A DNA stretch of 63,878 bases, filler included, from Octopus bimaculoides (Eukaryota): assembly GCF_001194135.2 (NCBI RefSeq). It is 7 parts of 5 records of this genome, joined end to end, with 100 filler letters (N's around TTAATTAATTAA, not from the genome) between each part and the next. Parts side by side here need not be neighbours in the genome. Positions count along the whole stretch, not along the records: positions 1 to 12,726 come from NC_069000.1; 6 more parts are not named here. One strand, given 5' to 3'. Both the position numbers and the translations under genes were made by a program. Positions within the stretch are counted from its first letter, which is position 1. Every line of letters starts with the position of its first letter. A model generated the notes under the pieces. It made no database searches, was not told the origin of the DNA, and saw only the letters and a list, made by a program, of their open reading frames with translations. Shown in pieces: positions 396-12,383 of this stretch.

Positions 396-666
396 CAGCT
401 ATATATATATATAATATATATATAAATACATACATATATATAGAGAGAGAGGGTATGAGAGGTAATGGTGTCAATAAGACCCAAAGTGTCAGGTAATGCT
501 GAGTAAGTGCTATGGACAGACCATAGTAAATCTCTAGGTTCGGTGATTATGCGAATCAGGAGTCCAACGTAGGTCATATATCAGCATGTGTGTATATAAA
601 AAATTTTTTTTTTCAGAATGAGATAAAAATCCAAGGCTGTGAAGATTTTACAACATTTATAAATAG

Positions 667-714
667 GTCTTACAGCTGTTTCTGGGATATTTATTATATC
701 CCTTCATCGGAGAC
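667..714 (-). ncRNA. Type I hammerhead ribozyme motif, one core substitution (U4C)
   Basis: Minus strand reads GUCU-CCGAUGA-A-GGGAUAU-aauaa-AUAUCCC-A-GAAA-CAGCUG-UA^AGAC. Helix I is GUCU/AGAC and helix III is the palindrome ACAGCUGU. Confidence 0.65.
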
Positions 715-1655
715 AGTGTGAGAAGATGGTTAAGTAACAGTTAATTTAGATAAGATATGAAATAGAGAGTGAAGTGGAGGAATGAAAATAGATGTGAGAT
801 ATGCAGGGATATTGCATTTGTAGATCCATTATTTAGGCAGAATGGTATACATATAAGATTCCAATACCTTGTGAGAAAATTCCAATAGTATTTAAAAGTG
901 GTCATTCCAAGTATAGAGTTTGTACACAGTGCTATTGAATCGAGGGTTTTATTTAAAGTGACCTAACAGTAGGGAATGTATTTGTATATAGCATGAACCA
1001 AAAATGTATACAGGATCAACCAAAAATTTTAAGCAACGATATGCCGCTTACCTCCATTCTATTAGATATGATAAACATAGTAAATCTACAACACTCGCAA
1101 CCACATACATCATTTCAAAAATACAAATATACCCTATACTCTATCATAGTCCATATTGGATTCAGGGCTTCCCTACTGAGGTCAATGCTCAACCTGCAAG
1201 CTTTACCTGAAGGAGGCACTTCACATATTAAAGCACAACTCTCCAGCACTGCTAAATAAACATAAGGAGGTACTAAACACATGCAACCACTGCTTTTTTC
1301 ACATTCAAATTCTACCACAAATCCAAATGCCTAAACGACCACACAGTATATTTCCACAATACCCCTTAGGTAATCCCAATAACCTTATAAATCTACATTT
1401 TAACTCCTAATCCCTATCTAATTCCTCTCTCATACTCGAATATCACAACCATCTAATTATATTCATGTGTACATGGATATGTGCATGTGTGTATGAGTGT
1501 ATGTGTGAATGTATGTATGTGAGCAAGGTATATATTCCTACGTGTGCAAAGGCAATAATACACACAGATACACATATATATGGATGTGCATGTGTACATA
1601 TATATATTATGAGTATGACTTGTATATGTAGATATTGATAGATATAAATATCTGT

Positions 1656-1743: not shown

Positions 1744-3193
1744 GCATCTGTATACATCTTCATATATATATTTTCTTCTACTACTAAGCACTGACCTGTC
1801 CAAATTACTACCTCTCCCTCTGCCCCATCATTTAGACTCTATTACTATATAACTGACACTCCTTTACTTTTTATACTATTATACCTCTCTCTCTATCACC
1901 CCCATTCCTTCTATCTGATACTCCTTTACTCTTTACCCTATCATCTTTTCTCGTTCTATCACCCTCATCTCCCCATTTTTACTTTCAATTTATCTTGACT
2001 GACCACTAACTGGTACACTTTCCCTGTCTTCATCTCTTTATTATCTCTCTCCTTGTTTTTCTTTTTTCCTTTTTTTTTTATTCCTCTCTTCCTGTTTATT
2101 TCTTTTTTTTTCTCTTTTCTTTATTCCTCTCTTCCTGTTTGCAATTTGATCTTACAAATACATTCCCTACTGTTAGGTCACTTTGAATTAAAATCCTTGA
2201 TTCAATAGCACTGTGTACAAACTCTATACTTGGAATAACCACTTTTAAATACTATTGGAATTTATTCACAAGGTATTAGAATCTTACATGTATACCATTC
2301 TGCCTAAATAATGGATCCACAAATGCAATATCCCTGCATATCTCACATCTATTTTCATTCCTCCACTTCACTCTCTATTTCATATCTTATCTAAATTAAC
2401 TATTGCTTAACCATCTTCTCACACTGCAATGAAGGGATATAATAAATATCCCAGAAACAGCTGTAAGACCTTCTATTTATAAATGTTGTAAAATCTTCAT
2501 AGCTTGGTTTTTTATCTCATTCTGAAAAAAAAAATGTATATATATATATATATATATNNNNNNNNNNNNNNNNNNNNNNNNNNNNNNNNNNNNNNNNNNN
2601 NNNNNNNNNNNNNNNNNNNNNNNNNNNNNNNNNNNNNNNNNNNNNNNNNNNNNNNNNNNNNNNNNNNNNNNNNNNNNNNNNNNNNNNNNNNNNNNNNNNN
2701 NNNNNNNNNNNNNNNNNNNNNNNNNNNNNNNNNNNNNNNNNNNNNNNNNNNNNNNNNNNNNNNNNNNNNNNNNNNNNNNNNNNNNNNNNNNNNNNNNNNN
2801 NNNNNNNNNNNNNNNNNNNNNNNNNNNNNNNNNNNNNNNNNNNNNNNNNNNNNNNNNNNNNNNNNNNNNNNNNNNNNNNNNNNNNNNNNNNNNNNNNNNN
2901 NNNNNNNNNNNNNNNNNNNNNNNNNNNNNNNNNNNNNNNNNNNNNNNNNNNNNNNNNNNNNNNNNNNNNNNNNNNNNNNNNNNNNNNNNNNNNNNNNNNN
3001 NNNNNNNNNNNNNNNNNNNNNNNNNNNNNNNNNNNNNNNNNNNNNNNNNNNNNNNNNNNNNNNNNNNNNNNNNNNNNNNNNNNNNNNNNNNNNNNNNNNN
3101 NNNNNNNNNNNNNNNNNNNNNNNNNNNNNNNNNNNNNNNNNNNNNNNNNNNNNNNNNNNNNNNNNNNNNNNNNNNNNNTATATATATATATAT

Positions 3194-3508
3194 GCTGAAA
3201 CCCCTTTCGGTCATGACTGACCAGGGAATTGCACCTAGAAAGTTACCCTCCCAGGCACAAGACCGGGCAAGGTTGTTTATGGAAGAACAGCAGTCGCCCA
3301 TGCATATCGGCCTCCCCTCACCATGCCACCAGTGTTATCCAAGGGAAAGGCAAAGGCTGATACAGCTTGGCACCTGTGATGTCGCAACTCATTTCTACAG
3401 CTGAGTGAACTGGAGCAACGTGAACACAACACGCAGCCTGGTCCGGAATTCGAATTCACAACCTCACGATCACAAGCTTGACGCTCTAACCACTGAGCCA
3501 TGCAACTT
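3194..3508 (-). mobile_element. tRNA-derived SINE
   Basis: Minus strand has A-box-like TGGCTCAGTGG and B-box-like GAATTCGAATTCC, then the core CACGTTGCTCCAGTTCACTCAGCTGTAGAAATGAG shared with 46111 and 51183. Confidence 0.75.
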
Positions 3509-3740
3509 CTATATAATATATATATAATACATATATATATAATATATATATATATATATGTATATTATTTACATTATTATTTAATTCAATGCAACACATC
3601 CATTTCCAAGTAAGTATATATATATATAAATACATATATACATATATGGATGTATATATATCATATATATATATATATCTATAATATGTGTGTGTGTGTG
3701 TGCGTGTGTGTGTGTGTGTGTGTGCGTGCATGTATATATA

Positions 3741-4047
3741 TAAACATAATTAAGAGATCAGCAACAGTTGCTTCACCNNNNNNNNNNCATGCATGCACAA
3801 TTGCCAGCATCGTCAGACTTGCAAACTGGAATATCATACTGATGAGGAAATGAAAAGTTTTTCACTTTTCTAAGCCAGAAATGCGTCTATGATTAACTAA
3901 GATTGGTTTGTTTCGTTGTTTTTTCTTCATGTTTTGCCTTTGTGAGTTACAAGTATTGCTATCTGTTGGAGTTTCAGCACTTTAGCTGCTATTTCTGAAC
4001 TTCAGTATGTGGTGAAGCAACTGTTGCTGATCCCTTAATTATGTTTA
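3741..4047 (+). mobile_element. About 300-bp non-autonomous element with 37-bp inverted ends and an internal hammerhead
   Basis: 3741-3777 versus 4011-4047 are reverse complements with 1 mismatch, in TA flanks. Hammerhead at 3833-3893. Confidence 0.75.
3833..3893 (+). ncRNA. Type I hammerhead ribozyme motif, catalytic core intact
   Basis: AUCAUA-CUGAUGA-(32-nt helix II region)-GAAA-UGC-GUC^UAUGAU. Helix I is a perfect 6 bp, and the cleavage triplet GUC ends at 3887. Confidence 0.7.
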
Positions 4048-4171
4048 TAAATGTATAAGAACTTTTAAATAAGTTCTTCACCGATAATGGTGTTTACATA
4101 CCGAAGGGCTTGGTAAAAATTATTAATTATTAATTTATTAATAAATTGATAATCCTTTACCCTTTTATTTG

Positions 4172-4235
<64 letters not shown>

Positions 4236-4540
4236 TACATATATAATATATTTATAATACACATATATGTAATATGAATTCATCCGATCCTATATGCTTA
4301 TCAGACCACACATTGAGACCCTGGATGTCATAATAAAAAACTATTGTGGCAAGGCTTATAAGGATGGAGAAGATGAAAAAGAAACAAAACCCGGAAGTCT
4401 CTTTGATCCAGTGGTTCCTCAAAAGAATGGATCCCCACCCCTGTGAACAACCAGGCAGAAAGAGATAGGGGAACCAAGGAAGCAGCAACTAGAAGCCCCT
4501 CTGTACCAGTGGTCCTACAAAGGAACGGGCCCTCACCCCA

Positions 4541-5050
4541 TTGGACAACCAGAGGAAAAAAGTTCTCACCACAAGAAAAGAAAGGACTGAACACAAACAC
4601 AAACATAAAGAAGGAAAGAAAGAAAAAGGAAAAGGCAAAAGTGAAACAACCAAAACCGAAACCCCAACCCACCAAACAAAAAACAGAAAACCTCATGGAA
4701 GATCCAATGCCATCCAAAACTCTACAGGAAAGAAGAAATTTGGAAGGCACTCAAGAACCTGCAAATTTTACCTGCAAGGCAAATGTTGGCATGGGGAGGT
4801 TGGCAAAAACTGCCAGTTTGCCTACCCAACACCCTGCCAAAACTACAAGGGCCTTAAGGAGAAAAACTTTCCTGAGGAAAGACAACAAATGTCTTCAAGG
4901 AAAAAATTTACAAAAGAAGTGCGCTCTTCAGAAATTATGCGCAAAGCAGCAGCTGAGCAAGAGTCTTTTTTGTATATGGCGCAAAAGATTGTGCTAGCTA
5001 CACCTGGCTACATCAAGTACAAACAAGGAACCTTGCCCGCCACTGCGTAA
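4541..5050 (+). pseudogene. LINE ORF1 C-terminal part with CCCH-like zinc finger
   Basis: Lys-rich segment followed by CKFYLQGKCWHGEVGKNCQFAYP (C-x7-C-x8-C-x3-Y; the last His is replaced by Tyr). Confidence 0.6.
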
Positions 5051-5075
5051 GACCACCACAGTCAACAGACATGGA

Positions 5076-6340
5076 ATGGCCTCCCCTAACGCCTGCACAG
5101 TCGTCATGCCAATATTTTTACTAAATATTGGGGGCCTGTTGCATCGTAATAAAAGCAAAATTTCTTTCCTGAGAGACCTTGCTGCATGCAATCAAGCCCT
5201 ATGCATAGCACTCACAGAAACTCACCTCAGCCCTGATATAGACGATGCAGAAGTACACATACCAAAATATGCCATACTGTGAACAAACAGAAGGGAAAGG
5301 AGCCATGGTGGAGTTGCTGTATACATCCGTGACGACCTCACACCCCAGGTCTTGCTGTCATACTCAAATTCAGTATGCGACACTCTAATTGTATACATAA
5401 GACAACATAATATAGTCATATGCAATACATATTGCCCACCGGATGCTCCAAACCACATAGGCAAGTTTGAAGATTACCTCACAAGAATGAAAGAAATCCT
5501 CATGAAACTGGAAGACCACGTGACCATATTTCTTATGGGTGATTTCAACTTCCCCAACGTCAAATGGCCTGAAGGTCTCATACTCTCAGGAATGACTCAT
5601 TACAAGCAAGCACAGGTGGGTCCCTGCTCAACCTCACTAATGCCCTATTCATGGAGCAAGCTGTACTCAGACCAACTAGGGCGAATAACATTTTGGATCT
5701 CTGCTTCACGAACAATATGGACATCATTCATGATGTGAAAGGGACGCCGACATTTGTCTCGGATCACAACATAATAGAGCTGTCTATGTTTGGGCCAAAA
5801 GTAAACAGAGACATACAGCCTAAAGGAAGCACCCAAAATCTCTCCAATCTGAACTTCCACAAAGTAGACTGGAAATCGATGCAAAAAGAGATCCTTAGAG
5901 CAGACTGGCCGAAATGTCTCTCTACACCAGACATTGACATGAAACTAGAATGTTTCGTGTGTGTTGTGCAAGCCATATGCCAGAAATATGTTCCAGAACA
6001 CAAGGCCAAAATAAATAGGAACAAGATTCCAGGGGAGAGCAAGATCCTCATGAGACAGTGGACGAAGGTTACAAATCGACTCAACCAGCATCCCAAAAGT
6101 AGCGAAAGGTCCCGCCTAAAAACAACGCTGATGGAGATTGAAAAAAGGTTGCAACAATCCTATGTGAAGGAGAGAGCAAACAAAGAAGCCTGGGCTATAA
6201 AAAACATTAAGTCAAACCCAAAAGGCCTTCTTTCATTACACGAAAGAAACAGGCTCAGTACGCTGCAAGATAGGACTTCTCTTCCAAAAAGGATGGCTCC
6301 ATCACAGACAGTTCAATTAGTATCAGTGAGGTACTGAATG
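5076..6340 (+). pseudogene. LINE ORF2 apurinic-endonuclease domain, with stops and frameshifts
   Basis: ORFs 5076-5282, 5352-5738 and 5651-6337 carry consecutive APE motifs in shifted frames. Confidence 0.85.
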
Positions 6341-6384
6341 ACCAGTTCAAAAGTGTCTTTACTACCCCGTTTGAACACAGACAA

Positions 6385-8073
6385 GTGAACGAACCAGTGG
6401 ACTTCTTTGCCGCCTCACCTATAACTAGCGAGGAAATTACAATGGAATACATCGACATTAGTGAAGAAGATATACTACTAGCCACAGATGAGGTGGACGT
6501 AAACTCAACTGCTGGTCCTGATGGTTTCTCAGCAATCCTCCTCAAATCATGTAAGCTTGCCCTGGCAAAACCCCTCCAGATTCTCTTCCAGAGCTTTCTT
6601 GCAAATGGCAGACTGTTAAGCAAGCTGAAGGAGGGAATAATATGCCCAATCCATAAAGGGGGAAGCAGAGCAGATGCCAAAAACTATAGGCCTATCTCTC
6701 TGACTTCACACATCAGCAATGTCATGGAACGGATAGTCAGAGGGAAACTAATCGCATTCCTTGAAGAAAATAACTTGCTGAGTGATACCAAGCATGGCTT
6801 TCGACCAGGTAGGAGCTGCCCGACCCAGCTCTTACAACATTATGACTGGGTGTTCAGGCAGTTACTGAACAACTCAAATGTGGACGTAATATACCTTGAT
6901 TTTGCAAAAGCTTTTGACAAAGTGGATCATGGTATGATATGCCACAAACTGTGTGATCTCGGCATAGCTGGCAAACTTGGAGAGTGGTTACATGACTTTC
7001 TGAAAGATAGAAGTCAGGTAGTAGTGGCTAATGGAGCCACCTCTATGAAAACACAAATAGTGAGCAGTGTTCCACAGGACACTGTCTTGGGACCACTACT
7101 TTTTATAGTGGCTCTCTCAGATATGCCCTCAAGTGCCCGGATAGCCACCCTTGATAGCTACGCAGATGCAACGAAAGTCTCACAGAAAATACGGAACCCC
7201 AGCGATGTTGCACATATGCAGCAGGAGTTGGACTCAATTTACAGATGCACTGAGGATAATAATATGCAGTTTAATACTGAAAAATTCCAAGCCCTGCACT
7301 ATCAGTGTCCCAAACTGAATATGAAACTTACAGGATACACTGGTCCACGGGGTATTTCAATCCCAAAGCCTAAATCAGTGAGGGACCTGGGTATCGACAT
7401 GAGTAATGATACCTCTTTCCAAGTGTACTTTACCAGGATGGCGACAAAGTGCAGACGACTGGCTGGATGGATCCTGAGAACATTCAGAACCAGAGAAAAG
7501 GAAACCATGATGGTCCTCTGGAGGACATTCGTCCTCAGCCTCCTGGATTACTGCTCCCAGCTATGGTCACCCAATAGTGTGAAATTAACAGTGGACCTTG
7601 AAGCCATCCAGATAAGATTCACAAAGAAGATCGTCTCATTGCAACAGCTCAGCTGCTGGGAGAGGCTGAAACAGCTAAGATTCTACTCCCTGGAGAGAAG
7701 GTGGCAGAGGTATGCAGTAATATACATCTGGAAGATCCTGGAAGGAATTGTGCCAAATTTTGGCATTGAAAGCTACACCCATGCCAGAACGGGACGACAC
7801 TGCACAGTGCCAAAGATTCCAGCAACGCCATTGTACTTTAGGACTAGTTACTGCAATAGCCTGGGTTTCAGGGGCCCACAGCTTTTTAATATTCTCCCAA
7901 AGAGCTTGAGAAACCTGCACAAAGTAGATGTAGGTGTTTTTAAATCAAAGCTGGACCTCTTCCTGTCAAGAGTCCCAGATGAACCTACCTCACAGCAAGA
8001 GGTGCAAATTAGGGTAGCTACATCAAACTCCATTCTTCACCAAGTACCACATATTGGAGGAGACTGTCAGTAA
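6385..8073 (+). CDS. LINE reverse transcriptase, 562-aa open frame, probably inactive
   Basis: Complete CR1-type RT motif series. The catalytic YADD is changed to YADA and PQG to PQD. Confidence 0.85.
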   Translation: MNEPVDFFAASPITSEEITMEYIDISEEDILLATDEVDVNSTAGPDGFSAILLKSCKLALAKPLQILFQSFLANGRLLSKLKEGIICPIHKGGSRADAKNYRPISLTSHISNVMERIVRGKLIAFLEENNLLSDTKHGFRPGRSCPTQLLQHYDWVFRQLLNNSNVDVIYLDFAKAFDKVDHGMICHKLCDLGIAGKLGEWLHDFLKDRSQVVVANGATSMKTQIVSSVPQDTVLGPLLFIVALSDMPSSARIATLDSYADATKVSQKIRNPSDVAHMQQELDSIYRCTEDNNMQFNTEKFQALHYQCPKLNMKLTGYTGPRGISIPKPKSVRDLGIDMSNDTSFQVYFTRMATKCRRLAGWILRTFRTREKETMMVLWRTFVLSLLDYCSQLWSPNSVKLTVDLEAIQIRFTKKIVSLQQLSCWERLKQLRFYSLERRWQRYAVIYIWKILEGIVPNFGIESYTHARTGRHCTVPKIPATPLYFRTSYCNSLGFRGPQLFNILPKSLRNLHKVDVGVFKSKLDLFLSRVPDEPTSQQEVQIRVATSNSILHQVPHIGGDCQ

Positions 8074-9018
8074 TGACAGTGTAGCAAAAACGGCGGTGTA
8101 TCTGCATGGCCACAGCTCTGAGCTGAAACAACAGAAAAAAAAAGAAGAAAAGAAAAAAAAATATTATTTACATTATTATTTAATTTAATGCAAAGCATCC
8201 ATTTCCAAGTAAGTATATNNNNNNNNNNNNNNNNNNNNNNNNNNNNNNNNNNNNNNNNNNNNNNNNNNNNNNNNNNNNNNNNNNNNNNNNNNNNNNNNNN
8301 NNNNNNNNNNNNNNNNNNNNNNNNNNNNNNNNNNNNNNNNNNNNNNNNNNNNNNNNNNNNNNNNNNNNNNNNNNNNNNNNNNNNNNNNNNNNNNNNNNNN
8401 NNNNNNNNNNNNNNNNNNNNNNNNNNNNNNNNNNNNNNNNNNNNNNNNNNNNNNNNNNNNNNNNNNNNNNNNNNNNNNNNNNNNNNNNNNNNNNNNNNNN
8501 NNNNNNNNNNNNNNNNNNNNNNNNNNNNNNNNNNNNNNNNNNNNNNNNNNNNNNNNNNNNNNNNNNNNNNNNNNNNNNNNNNNNNNNNNNNNNNNNNNNN
8601 NNNNNNNNNNNNNNNNNNNNNNNNNNNNNNNNNNNNNNNNNNNNNNNNNNNNNNNNNNNNNNNNNNNNNNNNNNNNNNNNNNNNNNNNNNNNNNNNNNNN
8701 NNNNNNNNNNNNNNNNNNNNNNNNNNNNNNNNNNNNNNNNNNNNNNNNNNNNNNNNNNNNNNNNNNNNNNNNNNNNNNNNNNNNNNNNNNNNNNNNNNNN
8801 NNNNNNNNNNNNNNNNNNNNNNNNNNNNNNNNNNNNNNNNNNNNNNNNNNNNNNNNNNNNNNNNNNNNNNNNNNNNNNNNNNNNNNNNNNNNNNNNNNNN
8901 NNNNNNNNNNNNNNNNNNNNNNNNNNNNNNNNNNNNNNNNTATATATATATGTATAATATCTATCTATATATATATATATATATATAAAACATATATCTA
9001 ATGTATATATATATATCA

Positions 9019-9390
9019 TGGTTGTGTGGTAAGTAGCTTGCTCACCAACCACATGGTCCCGAGTTCAGTTCCACTGCTTGGCATCTTGGGCAAGTGTCTT
9101 CTATAGCCTCCAGCTGACCAAAGCCTTGTGAGTGGATTTGGTAGACGGAGACTCAAAGAAGTCTGTCGCATATACATATGTATATAAATATACATATATG
9201 CATATGTATGTGTGTGTATATGTTGACGTGTCAGTGTTTGTCCCTTCAACATCGCTTGACAACTGATGCTGGTGTGTTTACATCCCCATAACTTTGCAGT
9301 CCCACAAAAAGAGACTGATAGAATAAGTATTATGCTTACAAAGCTTAAGCCCTGGGGTTGATTTGCTCGACTAAAGGTGGTGCTCCAGAA
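9019..9390 (+). mobile_element. Dominant octopus-type tRNA-derived SINE (family A)
   Basis: Head GTGTGGTAAGTAGCTTGC...GAGTTCAGTTCC, body GGCAAGTGTCTTCT...GTGAGTGGATTTGGTAGACGG, internal microsatellite, tail GGTGGTGCTCCAG. Confidence 0.85.
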
Positions 9391-11072
9391 GACACTTGCA
9401 CAAGGTGCCACACAGTGGGACTGAACCCAAGACCATGTGGTTGGTAAGCANNNNNNNNNNNNNNNNNNNNNNNNNNNNNNNNNNNNNNNNNNNNNNNNNN
9501 NNNNNNNNNNNNNNNNNNNNNNNNNNNNNNNNNNNNNNNNNNNNNNNNNNTCTCTCTCCACCAACAACACATAGCTCATCACAGCCCATAACACCACACC
9601 AAGTTTATAAAGTTAATACATTACGCAGTTAACTAAATCAAAGGCTTTAATAATCAGGAAAAACAGATTAATATTTATGCTTATAAAAAGAAAAAAATAA
9701 CAAGTCAAAAATTTATCATTCCCTTTTCAGTTGACAATCCAGAAAGAAAATTTGTTTGATGAAAAGAAACTAAATTATAAAGTGATAACTAAAGCAAGTG
9801 AGCTGGGAAACTCATGGAGATTTATTGCTGATTTATTGTTGAATCAAACTCGAATTGTCAAAAAGAGTTAGCAAAGTATATTGAAAATGTATTTTCTTTT
9901 TTAAAGAAAAATGATTTTATAATATATTTTTGTTATATTCTATTAAACATAGTTCAGTATTAAATTAAGTATATAATACTATTCAGTGACCAATTATTGA
10001 ATTATTAAATTGATTAATAATTTAATAGTTGTATAAAAGTGCATATAAGAATGATTTTATCTATTTTTGTAATGAATTATCAGTTTGTTTTGGGGTACCC
10101 TCAGTGTCTCACCTCCCTCTTGATTGCCCATCTTAATTTGAATATTTCTCAAAGCCCTTATTAATTATAGGTTTTTTGAAAATAAATCCTATACTCGTAT
10201 GTGAAAAAACAGTTTTCCTGACCGCTTGGGTCCAGTTTGAATGATTGATCAATGATTTAACTTGGTGGATTAACCTTTCCATCCTTGCCTCTGACGCTAT
10301 GGACCTAGATGGGATACATAAATATTCCATCTAGGTCCATAATTAAAGTAACTTATAAAAACTTAGGTAAAATGAAGTAAAAAGAAGTAGATACTTGCAC
10401 ACTAACGATGCAGAAAAATATAATTAAACAAGCAAGTATGGAATCAAGAGCAGAAGTAGGACGAGATAAGCAGAGAAAGAGAAAGAAGTATAATTTGACA
10501 AAGAAAAAAGGAAAAATGAGCCGTAAAGAACTTGTGCAGATGTTAACCAGTTAGCATGGACATTGTTGATTAGATGGATTTTCCATGTCGTCAATAATGT
10601 TGAAGTGGAGTTTTGATTAATAACTGTGACCTTACCTTCTGCACTGTCCATTATGTTTGTATGTTTTGCAGCTTTAAAATTTTGGAGCAATTTAGTATGA
10701 TGCAATGATATGTAGCTGTTCATCTTATGAACCAGACATATAACACTCAAAATCTAATATTAGAAAATTAGTACATAAGGATGATCCATCATAATTATAA
10801 ATGCATATACATGTGTTTCTTATATATATAGAGGAATTTCAACCATGTTTCGTGGTCTGCTACCACAACAGCTCCTTTATAGGATCCAGTTAGCTCAAGA
10901 CATCATCAGGAGGAACGACGTCCGGTTTCGGCCCCTATTCCTCTACCGTTTTGACGTGGCGGGGCCACCCCCTTTTGGAGGTGTCTTCAGCTCTGGTGTT
11001 GTGAACTTTACAAATAAAAATATATACCTACATGTTGAAATTTTATGATTCCCAAATTTTCTNNNNNNNNNN

Positions 11073-11179: not shown

Positions 11180-12383
11180 AAATTATGCAAAAATGAAAAT
11201 AACAGATATATTTACCAAAATTACATAAAAATATCTTGAAATACTAAAGAGTAAATTTATTCAATAAAATCACCATTGGCTTCAACCACAGCCTCCAGAT
11301 GACTTTGGACTCTCCTGCAACTCTTCTGGATGGTTTCCTTGTCTAAGTTGGATCATCTTTGGTGTTACAAGGAGCTTTGTTGGTCTCTCGCTCAACTGCA
11401 TTCCGCACATAATAATCAAGAGGGTTGCAGATGTTAGGGGTGATGCAGTCACAGAAATTAACAGTCATGTCTAGGTTCTCCTGCTTGTGCAGCATGGTGC
11501 AGAGTCCTGTTGCCAGACATAAGGTCTTCTAGTAGCCATCCTCTTGACCCAGGGCAGCACTACCTCATCCAGGCACTTGATGTAGGCCTCCATGTCAAGT
11601 CTGAGGCCGTGTGGGAAGATGAATGGAGGCATAATGTTGTCATCACTAGTGATCACTCCAAACACCATGATGTTGACTGGATGCTTGATTTTTATCACTC
11701 TCAGTACATGATTTGGAGACATGACAAGCCAACGGTTGTTTTGTATGTTTACCATCTGATCCTGGCAGAAATTCTTCTCATCTGAGAAAGACCAAAGCAT
11801 GTTTGGTTGGAGGGGTGCTTGAGTATGTTCAAAAGCTTTGTCGCACAGTCTTTCCTCTTCTCCTTGATGGCTTGGAATAAAAATTGGCCCTTTCTCTTCT
11901 TGTATGAGGAATACCAAATGTCTTCATGCACTGCCTGCCTGATAAGAAGCTCAGACACTCCCATGTCCCTGGTGATGGACCTGATTGACTTTGAGGAATT
12001 GTTGTCAATCATGGCTTAGATCTCACCAACAAATTCAGGAGTTCTTTTCTTATCAGAATGATCAGAATGAGTTTTCCAAACTGCTGTACCTTTGTAATTA
12101 CCATTTGACTAATCCAACTTTTTCCAAATCCTCTGCACTGTCCTCAGATTGACACTCAAACATTCTGAAATGTTTTTATTGGAGCTTCCAGCACAAATAC
12201 CAAGTAGTGGAACATGTCATTTCCAAATTTTTGGCAGAGTGATTTGTGTCATGGTGCTCTTTTTCTCACAGATGGTGTTCAACTGACCCTACTATACTGT
12301 GTACTTGACAAAATCAAAAACAAACAATGGACATGCGCAAAATTAAAATTATAAAATGGCAAGAATTAACCCATCGCACCCTG
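11180..12383 (-). mobile_element. Tc1/mariner superfamily transposon, maT (DD37D)-like, decayed
   Basis: Fragments SIRSITRDMGVSE, WSFSDEKNFCQDQMVNIQNNRW, IKHPVNIMVFGVITSD, VWQQDSAPC. The terminus CGCACCCTG+TA is at 12383. Confidence 0.85.

What the first reader, a model, noticed from the sequence alone, without database searches (positions are those of the whole stretch)
3741..4047. MITE-looking element that actually carries a hammerhead
Seen: 37-bp inverted ends in TA flanks would be annotated as a MITE, but the interior has AUCAUA-CUGAUGA...GAAA-UGC-GUC^UAUGAU. A single C-to-T change (CpG decay) from GAAACGCGUC would restore the ACGCGU palindrome. Inference: this is a PLE-dependent retroelement whose inverted end arose during reverse transcription, not a DNA transposon.
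Basis: partly seen in the sequence, partly recalled or inferred. Interest (0 to 1): 0.7.

Follow-up and report, generated by a model that had tools for sequence, protein, structure and literature searches.

The report
Hammerhead-like repeat mimicking a MITE
A roughly 300-base repeat in an octopus-like genome looks like a small cut-and-paste transposon but carries a slightly damaged hammerhead-ribozyme motif, so it is most likely a fragment of a Penelope-type retroelement, a known kind, though this one gap-interrupted copy cannot prove it.

Summary
Arms 3741-3777 and 4011-4047 are 36/37 complementary, with TA on both sides. The + strand at 3833-3893 reads AUCAUA-CUGAUGA-(helix II)-A-GAAA-UGCG-UC^UAUGAU.

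Caveats:
- The left arm is the last 37 bases of a 599-bp contig that ends at the N gap, so its true length and its adjacency to the interior are unknown.
- The TA flanks lie in a (TA)n tract.
- One extra A sits between helix II and GAAA.
- Rfam finds no hammerhead: the best hit is 13.6 bits against a gathering score of 56.3, and it uses a different pairing.

The motif is rare by chance, about 1e-3 per window. The window comes from an octopod-like cephalopod. In Octopus vulgaris, Penelope-like elements (PLEs) cover 6.8% of the genome. PLEs carry such hammerheads in their terminal repeats, insert at (TA)n, often add a head-to-head inverted truncated copy, and break short-read assemblies.

Best reading (about 0.5): a pLTR-sized 3' fragment of a PLE, or of a PLE-dependent unit, with an inverted partial copy. 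Main rival (about 0.25): a TA-targeting MITE with a chance motif. This is known biology; its value is as an annotation pitfall.

The parts
3741..3777 (-). Left arm: inverted copy of the unit's right (3') end, at least 37 nt. It is cut off by the contig end and the gap.
   Evidence: 36/37 complementary to 4011-4047. It forms the last bases of contig 3179-3777.
3778..3787 (.). Assembly gap (10 N). It hides the junction between the inverted arm and the interior.
   Evidence: the contig ends do not overlap and the IR does not resume after the gap.
3788..4010 (+). Interior of the unit: non-coding, about 35% G+C, not unusually structured.
   Evidence: No ORF longer than 31 aa lies wholly inside the unit. 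Interior fold z = +0.9 against shuffles.
3833..3893 (+). Hammerhead-like motif. Helix I is 3833-3838 paired with 3888-3893. CUGAUGA is 3839-3845. Helix II is GG 3846-3847 with CC 3875-3876, plus the distal 7-bp stem 3852-3858 with 3864-3870. The extra A is 3877. GAAA is 3878-3881. UGCG is 3882-3885. U16.1 and C17 are 3886-3887, so predicted cleavage falls between 3887 and 3888.
   Evidence: Helices I and II have pair probabilities of 0.7-0.94. There is no Rfam hammerhead hit above threshold.
4011..4047 (+). Right arm: the 3' terminal 37 nt of the unit. It contains the palindrome AGCAAC-T-GTTGCT.
3739..3740 (.). Left TA flank: a possible TA target duplication, or simply the end of a (TA)n tract.
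4048..4049 (.). Right TA flank.
3729..3736 (.). CATGTATA: a possible alternative 8-bp target duplication, matching AATGTATA at 4050-4057 in 7 of 8 positions. It is offset from the IR end by one TA unit.
   Evidence: My rough estimate is p about 0.06, so this is a hint only.
4050..4057 (.). AATGTATA: the partner of 3729-3736.
1071..1123 (+). Weak, diverged match to the reverse complement of the unit's right end. It covers 59 nt of the unit and so runs 21 nt beyond the 37-nt arm.
   Evidence: Local alignment score 20.5; 9 of 100 window shuffles reach that score.
9701..9742 (-). Weak match (79% over 42 nt) to the 5' half of the hammerhead-like region. The core box reads CTGAAAA here.
   Evidence: Score 22.5; 2 of 100 window shuffles reach it. 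The match does not extend further.

Best explanation
The unit is most likely a pLTR-sized 3' terminal fragment, at least 260 bp, of a Penelope-like retroelement (PLE) or of a short PLE-dependent derivative of one. It is oriented on the + strand with its 3' end at 4047. It sits head-to-head with a short inverted copy of its own 3' end (the left arm) and was inserted at the edge of a (TA)n tract.

Inferred mechanism, taken from published PLE biology and not shown here:
- A PLE reverse transcriptase plus GIY-YIG endonuclease copies the RNA into a nicked AT-rich target.
- Copying stops early, giving 5' truncation.
- Template switching or self-priming adds an inverted partial copy, so both outer ends are the element's 3' terminus and mimic terminal inverted repeats.
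- The hammerhead lies in the terminal repeat. In master copies arranged in tandem, two such motifs pair through the palindromic helix III to cleave multimeric transcripts.

This particular copy is probably inert. It is single, its helix III palindrome is weakened (UGCG instead of CGCG), and it has an extra A between helix II and GAAA.

Shown here: the arms, the motif, its rarity by chance, and the cephalopod origin of the window. Inferred: PLE parentage, the origin of the inverted arm, and any cleavage.
For: - The motif is the only descriptor hit in the window. The same relaxed descriptor gave 1 hit in 30 Mb of Markov-1 random sequence with a 6-bp helix I, 5 hits with 5 bp and 20 with 4 bp. 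That is about 1e-3 expected per window on both strands.
- A 6-bp helix I, and a 1-bp helix III capped by a near-palindromic tetraloop, match the published metazoan and PLE type I architecture. The self-dimer of GAAAUGCGUC still pairs (-5.3 kcal/mol, against -8.9 for CGCG).
- Helices I and II dominate the folding ensemble.
- The predicted cleavage site is 160 nt from the 3' end, within the roughly 180-220 bp pLTR scale reported for rotifer PLEs.
- The LINE and a SINE-like repeat in the window have their closest named relatives in Argonauta hians.
- PLEs cover 6.83% of the O. vulgaris genome, against 4.2% for Tc1-Mariner and 0.007% annotated MITE. Penelope is among the most abundant families in coleoid cephalopods.
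- Canonical PLEs carry hammerheads in their pLTRs.
- Inverted 5'-truncated copies, (TA)n targets, 8-10 bp target duplications and assembly failures at these structures are documented.
- The gap sits exactly at the inner edge of the inverted arm.
Against: - No PLE ORF or remnant was found in the window.
- There is no direct or tandem repeat of the unit.
- No Rfam hammerhead model matches above noise.
- The extra A lies on the 3' side of helix II. The only insertion described for PLE hammerheads is between positions 9 and 10.1.
- The base of helix II is only 2 bp.
- The fold is not more stable than shuffles (z -0.9), and the minimum-energy structure sequesters G5-G8 and the cleavage site.
- A 36/37 IR with TA on both sides is exactly what a Tc1/mariner-type MITE looks like.
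- The base-rate argument uses O. vulgaris figures, and the species of the window is not identified.
- No other copy or autonomous partner could be retrieved.
Confidence: 0.5

Rival explanations
1. An ordinary non-autonomous DNA transposon: a MITE of the Tc1/mariner or another TA-targeting superfamily. It would have TIRs of at least 37 bp and a TA target duplication, and would move by cut-and-paste using a transposase encoded elsewhere. The hammerhead-like string would be a coincidence with no function.
For: - The IR is 36/37 and reaches the very ends, with TA on both sides; the unit is small and non-coding.
- Tc1-Mariner is the largest TIR group in O. vulgaris, at 119 Mb.
- No Rfam hammerhead hit, a core insertion, and a weak helix II base.
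- The second weak copy of the region has CTGAAAA in place of CTGATGA.
Against: - The chance rate of the motif inside a 230-bp interior is of the order of 1e-5 (derived).
- The helix III architecture matches PLE hammerheads.
- The TA flanks lie in a (TA)n tract, so they are weak evidence.
- No TIR-matching autonomous element is in the window.
- The fixed TIR length cannot be seen because the arm ends at a contig end.
Confidence: 0.25
2. The inverted repeat is an assembly or scaffolding artefact. On this reading the 599-bp contig 3179-3777 carries the 3' end of another copy of the same repeat with a different flank, and was placed or oriented wrongly. The real locus would then be a solitary 5'-truncated repeat fragment (3788-4047) with no left arm.
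For: - The arm is exactly the terminal 37 nt of a short contig bounded by gaps on both sides, as expected where a unique flank runs about k-1 bases into a repeat.
- The arms differ at one base, so they are two distinct copies.
- The same short contig also shares 58 bp (95%) with the far end of the next contig, so repeat-driven linking is plausible.
Against: - Nothing contradicts the scaffold order.
- Head-to-head structures are genuine and common for PLEs.
- No reads are available to test this.
Confidence: 0.1
3. A genuine hammerhead carried by something other than a PLE fragment. It could be a class II MITE family that captured or evolved a ribozyme, or a solitary monomer of a non-LTR retrozyme that circulates as a small circular RNA.
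For: - The motif is statistically non-random.
- The unit size of about 300 bp and its low G+C match non-LTR retrozyme monomers.
- Solo monomers are documented.
Against: - The interior is not rod-like or highly self-paired (z +0.9).
- There is no tandem copy.
- No hammerhead-bearing MITE turned up in the literature searched.
Confidence: 0.07

Closest known systems
Hammerhead motifs in the pseudo-LTRs of Penelope-like elements (Cervera & de la Pena 2014, PMC4209133)
   Same: Type I layout with open helix I, CUGAUGA and GAAA boxes, a GUC site, a long helix II stem, and a minimal helix III whose (near-)palindromic loop implies action as a dimer. The motif lies within about 200 nt of the element's 3' end. 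Many such motifs occur as single copies in truncated elements, some close together on opposite strands.
   Different: The extra unpaired base is 3' of helix II, not between positions 9 and 10.1. Helix II has a 4x4 internal loop. Helix I is 6 bp (4-5 in the min-HHRs). No linked PLE ORF was seen and no family alignment is available.
Head-to-head (inverted pLTR) insertion structure of PLEs (Arkhipova 2013, PMC3846280; Craig 2021, PMC8557442)
   Same: An inverted partial copy abuts the 5' side, so both outer ends are the element's 3' end. The target is in (TA)n. A short target duplication is possible. The assembly breaks at the inverted junction.
   Different: The visible inverted copy is only 37 nt or more. 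There is no direct pLTR pair and no ORF. The junction is hidden in the gap.
Non-LTR retrozymes of animals (Cervera & de la Pena 2020, PMC7229834; Li et al. 2026 preprint)
   Same: A short, AT-rich, non-coding unit of about 300 bp with a type I hammerhead whose helix III is a single pair capped by a tetraloop. Thought to depend on PLEs. Solo monomers exist.
   Different: There is no tandem repeat here, the RNA is not highly self-paired, and inverted arms are not a described feature of retrozymes.
Tc1/mariner-derived (Stowaway-like) MITEs
   Same: Size, terminal inverted repeats, TA on both sides, no coding capacity.
   Different: The termini (TAAACAT... or AACAT...) match no transposon seen here. 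The interior carries a statistically unlikely hammerhead-like motif. Copy number and TIR constancy are untested.

Membership tests
Hammerhead ribozyme (type I, metazoan/PLE-type) | Core boxes CUGANGA and GAAA and an NUH cleavage triplet in the correct order | tested here: met
   CUGAUGA 3839-3845, GAAA 3878-3881, GUC 3885-3887.
Hammerhead ribozyme (type I, metazoan/PLE-type) | Helix II closes directly onto the core (G10.1-C11.1 followed immediately by G12) | tested here: not met
   An unpaired A (3877) lies between C11.1 and G12. Only 2 bp (GG/CC) precede a 4x4 internal loop. The alternative register has a 1-bp helix II and is energetically unfavourable (+1.0 kcal/mol).
Hammerhead ribozyme (type I, metazoan/PLE-type) | Helix I flanking the core and the cleavage site | tested here: met
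   6 bp, AUCAUA/UAUGAU, pair probability 0.75-0.94.
Hammerhead ribozyme (type I, metazoan/PLE-type) | Short helix III with a palindromic loop that allows a dimeric active form | tested here: inconclusive
   AUGCGU self-pairs only with two G-U wobbles (-5.3 kcal/mol, against -8.9 for ACGCGU). No second motif nearby could serve as a partner.
Hammerhead ribozyme (type I, metazoan/PLE-type) | Score above threshold with a curated covariance model | tested here: not met
   No hammerhead family at E<=10 in the 12.7-kb and 223-nt scans. RAGATH-1-hammerhead scores 13.6 bits (gathering score 56.3) in the 75-nt scan.
Hammerhead ribozyme (type I, metazoan/PLE-type) | Conservation or covariation across copies, and self-cleavage | not testable with these tools
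   No further copies could be retrieved.
Penelope-like element (fragment or derivative) | Sequence continuity or shared 3' end with an element encoding PLE reverse transcriptase plus GIY-YIG endonuclease | not testable with these tools
   The source genome is not searchable here. The window itself holds only a LINE (RVT_1 plus an AP-endonuclease domain) and no PLE domains.
Penelope-like element (fragment or derivative) | pLTR arrangement: a partial tandem and/or an inverted 5'-truncated copy | tested here: inconclusive
   An inverted partial copy is present, at least 37 nt. There is no direct tandem copy. The junction lies in the gap.
Penelope-like element (fragment or derivative) | Variable 5' truncation with a fixed 3' end among copies | not testable with these tools
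   Only one weak extra 3'-end-like fragment was found in the window (1071-1123; 9 of 100 shuffles reach its score).
Penelope-like element (fragment or derivative) | Insertion bias for microsatellites such as (TA)n | tested here: met
   The left flank is (TG)n(TA)n running up to the element. This is not specific to PLEs.
Non-LTR retrozyme | Tandem repeats of a 150-450 bp unit, each with a type I hammerhead | tested here: not met
   The unit is single, and the only direct-repeat families are microsatellites.
Non-LTR retrozyme | Highly self-paired (rod-like) RNA | tested here: not met
   Interior minimum free energy is -44.4 kcal/mol against a shuffle mean of -48.4 (z +0.9).
MITE (TA-targeting, Tc1/mariner-type) | Terminal inverted repeats at both ends of a short non-coding unit | tested here: met
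   36/37 over 37 nt. The arm length is a lower bound because of the gap.
MITE (TA-targeting, Tc1/mariner-type) | TA target-site duplication | tested here: inconclusive
   TA is present on both sides, but inside a TA-rich tract. An 8-bp repeat matching in 7 of 8 positions is an alternative.
MITE (TA-targeting, Tc1/mariner-type) | Many copies with constant ends, and TIRs matching an autonomous transposon | not testable with these tools
   No second full copy is in the window, and the public collections searched gave only chance hits.

The most novel reading that the evidence does not exclude
A true class II element: a MITE family mobilised by a DDE transposase whose consensus carries a conserved, cleavage-competent hammerhead. 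That would mean a ribozyme hitch-hiking on a DNA transposon rather than on a retroelement.
Probability: 0.05. Interest if true: 0.6.

Novelty: new member of a known kind. Interest (0 to 1): 0.27.

Why it matters
If the best reading is right, this is one more PLE-derived hammerhead fragment in a genome group where PLEs are abundant, which is known biology. Its practical value is as an annotation warning. Head-to-head PLE fragments have perfect inverted ends and sit in TA tracts, so structure-based MITE finders would call them MITEs. A hammerhead scan of 'MITE' libraries could reclassify them.

It would also suggest that cephalopod PLEs carry hammerhead variants that the curated Rfam models miss. 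Only the unlikely case of a hammerhead truly fixed in a DNA-transposon family would be new.

Tried and rejected
1. Fetching other copies.
- The 21-mer from the arm gave 0 hits in viral contigs and 0 in JGI metagenomes. It gave 3 hits in bacterial MAGs with no extension beyond the 21-mer, so these are chance.
- A gapped hammerhead pattern gave 10 metagenome hits. All are G+C-rich bacterial contigs with no related helix I or flanks, so chance.
- A six-frame translation of the unit, used as a protein query against 5.8 billion proteins, gave no hit at E<=10.
- Three window ORFs are not on record in the contig index.
- Literal sequence strings were not found in the paper library, nor in an octopus repeat paper's supplement.

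2. A 22-kb Argonauta hians locus and an ENA metagenome contig share the LINE (both) and a SINE-like repeat (A. hians only) with the window. Neither contains the unit or any descriptor hit.

3. Retrozyme-like rod structure: rejected.

4. Alternative hammerhead register suggested by the RAGATH-1 alignment (1-bp helix II, long helix III): rejected on energy (+1.0 kcal/mol, pair probabilities about 0).

5. Extension of the 9701-9742 match to the whole unit: not significant (52.8 against 47.1 +/- 4.2).

6. PLE protein remnants in the window: no Pfam hit in five of seven pooled sets of stop-free segments of at least 40 aa outside the LINE. The two sets left out were mostly microsatellite translations.

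7. The G+C-rich block 10832-11000 (- strand), with two CUGANGA boxes, does not satisfy helix I and is not a hammerhead.

Full report
WHAT IS THERE

Two arms, 3741-3777 and 4011-4047, are reverse complements at 36 of 37 positions. With the flanking TA on each side, BLAST reports 39 nt at 97.4%. The inner 22-mer occurs nowhere else in the window, even with 3 mismatches, and never in 200 shuffles.

On the + strand, 3833-3893 reads AUCAUA CUGAUGA GG-AAAU-GAAAAGU-UUUUC-ACUUUUC-UAAG-CC A GAAA UGCG UC^ UAUGAU. This gives:
- a 6-bp helix I bracketing the motif;
- both hammerhead core boxes;
- a GUC cleavage triplet;
- a helix III reduced to the A15.1-U16.1 pair around UGCG.

Changing T3882 to C would give the ACGCGU palindrome. 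The window is strongly CpG-depleted (o/e 0.35, TpG o/e 1.33), so a CpG-to-TpG decay is plausible.

First, the gap. The window consists of six contigs, and the left arm is the last 37 bases of a 599-bp contig (3179-3777) that has gaps on both sides.
- '37 bp' is therefore a lower bound fixed by the contig end, not a measured arm length.
- The arm's adjacency to the interior rests on scaffolding alone.
- The two contig ends do not overlap.
- The inverted repeat does not resume after the gap (best score 8, against 8.5 +/- 1.3 for shuffles).
- Nothing here is coding, so reading frame is not an issue.
- Continuity cannot be tested further without reads.

Second, the left flank is a (TG)n(TA)n microsatellite, so TA next to the element means little. 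An 8-bp direct repeat (C/A)ATGTATA at 3729-3736 and 4050-4057, offset by one TA unit, is an alternative target duplication. By my rough estimate it has about a 6% chance of arising at random.

Third, there is an extra A (3877) between helix II and GAAA, and only two base pairs at the base of helix II.

IS THE HAMMERHEAD-LIKE MOTIF MORE THAN CHANCE?

I wrote a deliberately relaxed descriptor. It requires a helix I of n bp abutting CUGANGA, 8-61 nt, GAAA, 0-8 nt, U then a non-G base, then the other helix I strand. It makes no demand on helix II.
- It finds only this site in the window, even with a 4-bp helix I. The window has 9 CUGANGA sites in total.
- In 30 Mb of first-order Markov sequence with the window's composition it found 1 hit with 6 bp, 5 with 5 bp and 20 with 4 bp.
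- That is about 0.03-0.04 hits per Mb per strand, or about 1e-3 per window, and about 1e-5 inside a given 230-bp interior.
- A quarter of the 4-bp hits also had a hairpin of at least 7 bp where helix II belongs.

Thermodynamics:
- Helices I and II are the dominant pairs (probabilities 0.7-0.94).
- The hammerhead-compatible structure has -8.0 kcal/mol. The minimum, -10.8 kcal/mol, adds four pairs that sequester G5-G8 and the cleavage site.
- The fold is no more stable than shuffles (z -0.9).

Curated models give no support. No hammerhead family appears at E<=10 in the scans of the whole window or of 223 nt. In a 75-nt scan only RAGATH-1-hammerhead appears, at 13.6 bits against a gathering score of 56.3. 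It uses a different register, which is energetically unfavourable (+1.0 kcal/mol).

So the motif is hammerhead-like and statistically non-random, but it does not pass a membership test.

WHERE THE WINDOW COMES FROM, AND THE BASE RATES

The window is eukaryotic. A LINE with an AP-endonuclease domain and RVT_1 has its best named relatives in the octopod Argonauta hians, at 57-60% amino-acid identity. A 95-bp SINE-like repeat (9075-9170) has five copies at 81-85% identity in one 22-kb A. hians locus.

Published figures for Octopus vulgaris:
- Penelope-like elements (PLEs): 6.83% of the genome (191 Mb, 190 families).
- Tc1-Mariner: 119 Mb.
- Elements annotated as MITE: 0.19 Mb.

Penelope is also among the most abundant families across coleoid cephalopods.

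Published PLE biology relevant here:
- Canonical PLEs carry hammerheads in their pseudo-LTRs.
- Those hammerheads typically have a long helix II, a minimal helix III with palindromic positions, great sequence variability and low activity, and they are thought to act as dimers.
- PLE insertions are 5'-truncated.
- They often have an inverted 5'-truncated copy abutting the 5' side, so the whole insert gains inverted ends.
- They prefer microsatellites such as (TA)n.
- They make target duplications of about 8-10 bp.
- They 'often lead to problems in WGS assemblies'.

Every one of these features is compatible with this locus. That includes the gap at the inner edge of the inverted arm, and the position of the predicted cleavage site, 160 nt from the 3' end and so within a pLTR-sized terminal segment.

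WEIGHING

The IR plus TA favours a MITE by a modest factor. The motif favours a hammerhead-bearing retroelement by a large factor, because a chance motif inside a given small element has a probability of about 1e-5. By contrast, an octopod window is expected to hold several hundred bases of PLE sequence.

This argument is an inference. It borrows numbers from O. vulgaris for an unidentified species, and it assumes that octopod PLEs carry hammerheads as other canonical PLEs do.

Direct evidence is missing:
- The window has no PLE domains.
- There is no tandem pLTR.
- I could not obtain a single further full copy.

Inside the window there are only two weak partial matches.
- 1071-1123 resembles the reverse complement of the right end over 59 nt of the unit, 21 nt further than the arm. 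Nine of 100 window shuffles score as high.
- 9701-9742 (- strand) resembles the 5' half of the motif at 79%, with CTGAAAA in place of CTGATGA. Two of 100 shuffles score as high.

These matches suggest an old repeat family but decide nothing.

Confidences:
- About 0.5 for a PLE-type fragment with a head-to-head inverted partial copy.
- About 0.25 for a TA-targeting MITE with a chance motif.
- About 0.1 that the inverted repeat is a scaffolding artefact, with the arm belonging to another copy.
- About 0.07 for other hammerhead carriers (a retrozyme monomer, or a MITE with a real ribozyme).

A retrozyme-like rod structure is not supported (interior z +0.9).

FUNCTION OF THIS COPY

Even on the best reading this copy is probably inert.
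- It is a single motif with no partner in cis.
- Its dimer helix III is weakened (-5.3 against -8.9 kcal/mol).
- The extra A lies at a position where no tolerated insertion is described. The known one is between positions 9 and 10.1.

COMPARISON AND NOVELTY

PLE hammerheads (2014), PLE head-to-head structures (2013, 2021) and PLE-derived non-autonomous hammerhead units (2020, and the 2026 preprint) are all described.

The practical point is that such fragments would be misfiled as MITEs by structure-based tools.

Noticed in passing
window 3562-3619 and 8161-8218: A 58-bp direct repeat (55/58 identical) brackets the microsatellite, the focal unit and the whole LINE. The second copy starts right after the LINE's A-rich tail and is cut off by the contig end. 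It is absent from related LINE 3' ends in L014 and L015. It could be an unusually long target duplication with 5' transduction, a segmental duplication, or a fragment of another repeat.
   Followed up: partly
window 4443-8161 (+): A LINE with an ORF1-like region, an AP-endonuclease domain and RVT_1, broken by frame changes between 5352-5738, 5651-6337 and 6385-8073. It ends in an A-rich tail at about 8133-8161. Closest named relatives are Argonauta hians proteins (57-60% identity). An ENA metagenome contig (ERZ23491053) carries a LINE that is 76% identical at the DNA level.
   Followed up: partly
window 593-986 and 2153-2546: A 399-bp inverted repeat at 93.5% identity flanks about 1.17 kb that includes a long (TA)n tract. 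The right arm ends 11 bp before the 621-N gap. It may be an element with long inverted ends or two copies head-to-head. It was not classified.
   Followed up: no
window 9039-9170 and 9387-9450; L014 (five sites): A SINE-like repeat of about 95-130 bp is present in the window with an inverted partial partner that runs into the 100-N gap. It has five copies at 81-85% identity within one 22-kb Argonauta hians locus, which points to an octopod origin for the window.
   Followed up: partly
window 10832-11000 (- strand): A G+C-rich block carries two CUGANGA boxes 81 nt apart and the strings CCGAAACCGGACGUC and CACGAAACAUGG, and ends at a (TA)5 tract. It does not satisfy helix I pairing and is not a hammerhead by my descriptor. 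Its nature is unknown.
   Followed up: partly
window 11471-12012 (- strand): Two overlapping ORFs (148 and 87 aa) look transposase-like by eye but have no Pfam match, even at E<=1.
   Followed up: partly
L002, L003, L005, L008, L009, L010 (soil and other metagenome contigs): Six G+C-rich contigs share a near-identical stretch, CUGAUGAGGCC...(G/A)CCAGAAAUGCGUC. Two of them have a GGCC/GGCC stem and a 4-bp helix I. This is probably a conserved coding region matched by chance through my own search pattern.
   Followed up: no
window 3395-3500 (- strand): The stretch GGCTCAGTGGTTAGAGCGTCAAGC... resembles a tRNA-derived SINE head by eye. ARAGORN and Rfam report no tRNA there.
   Followed up: no
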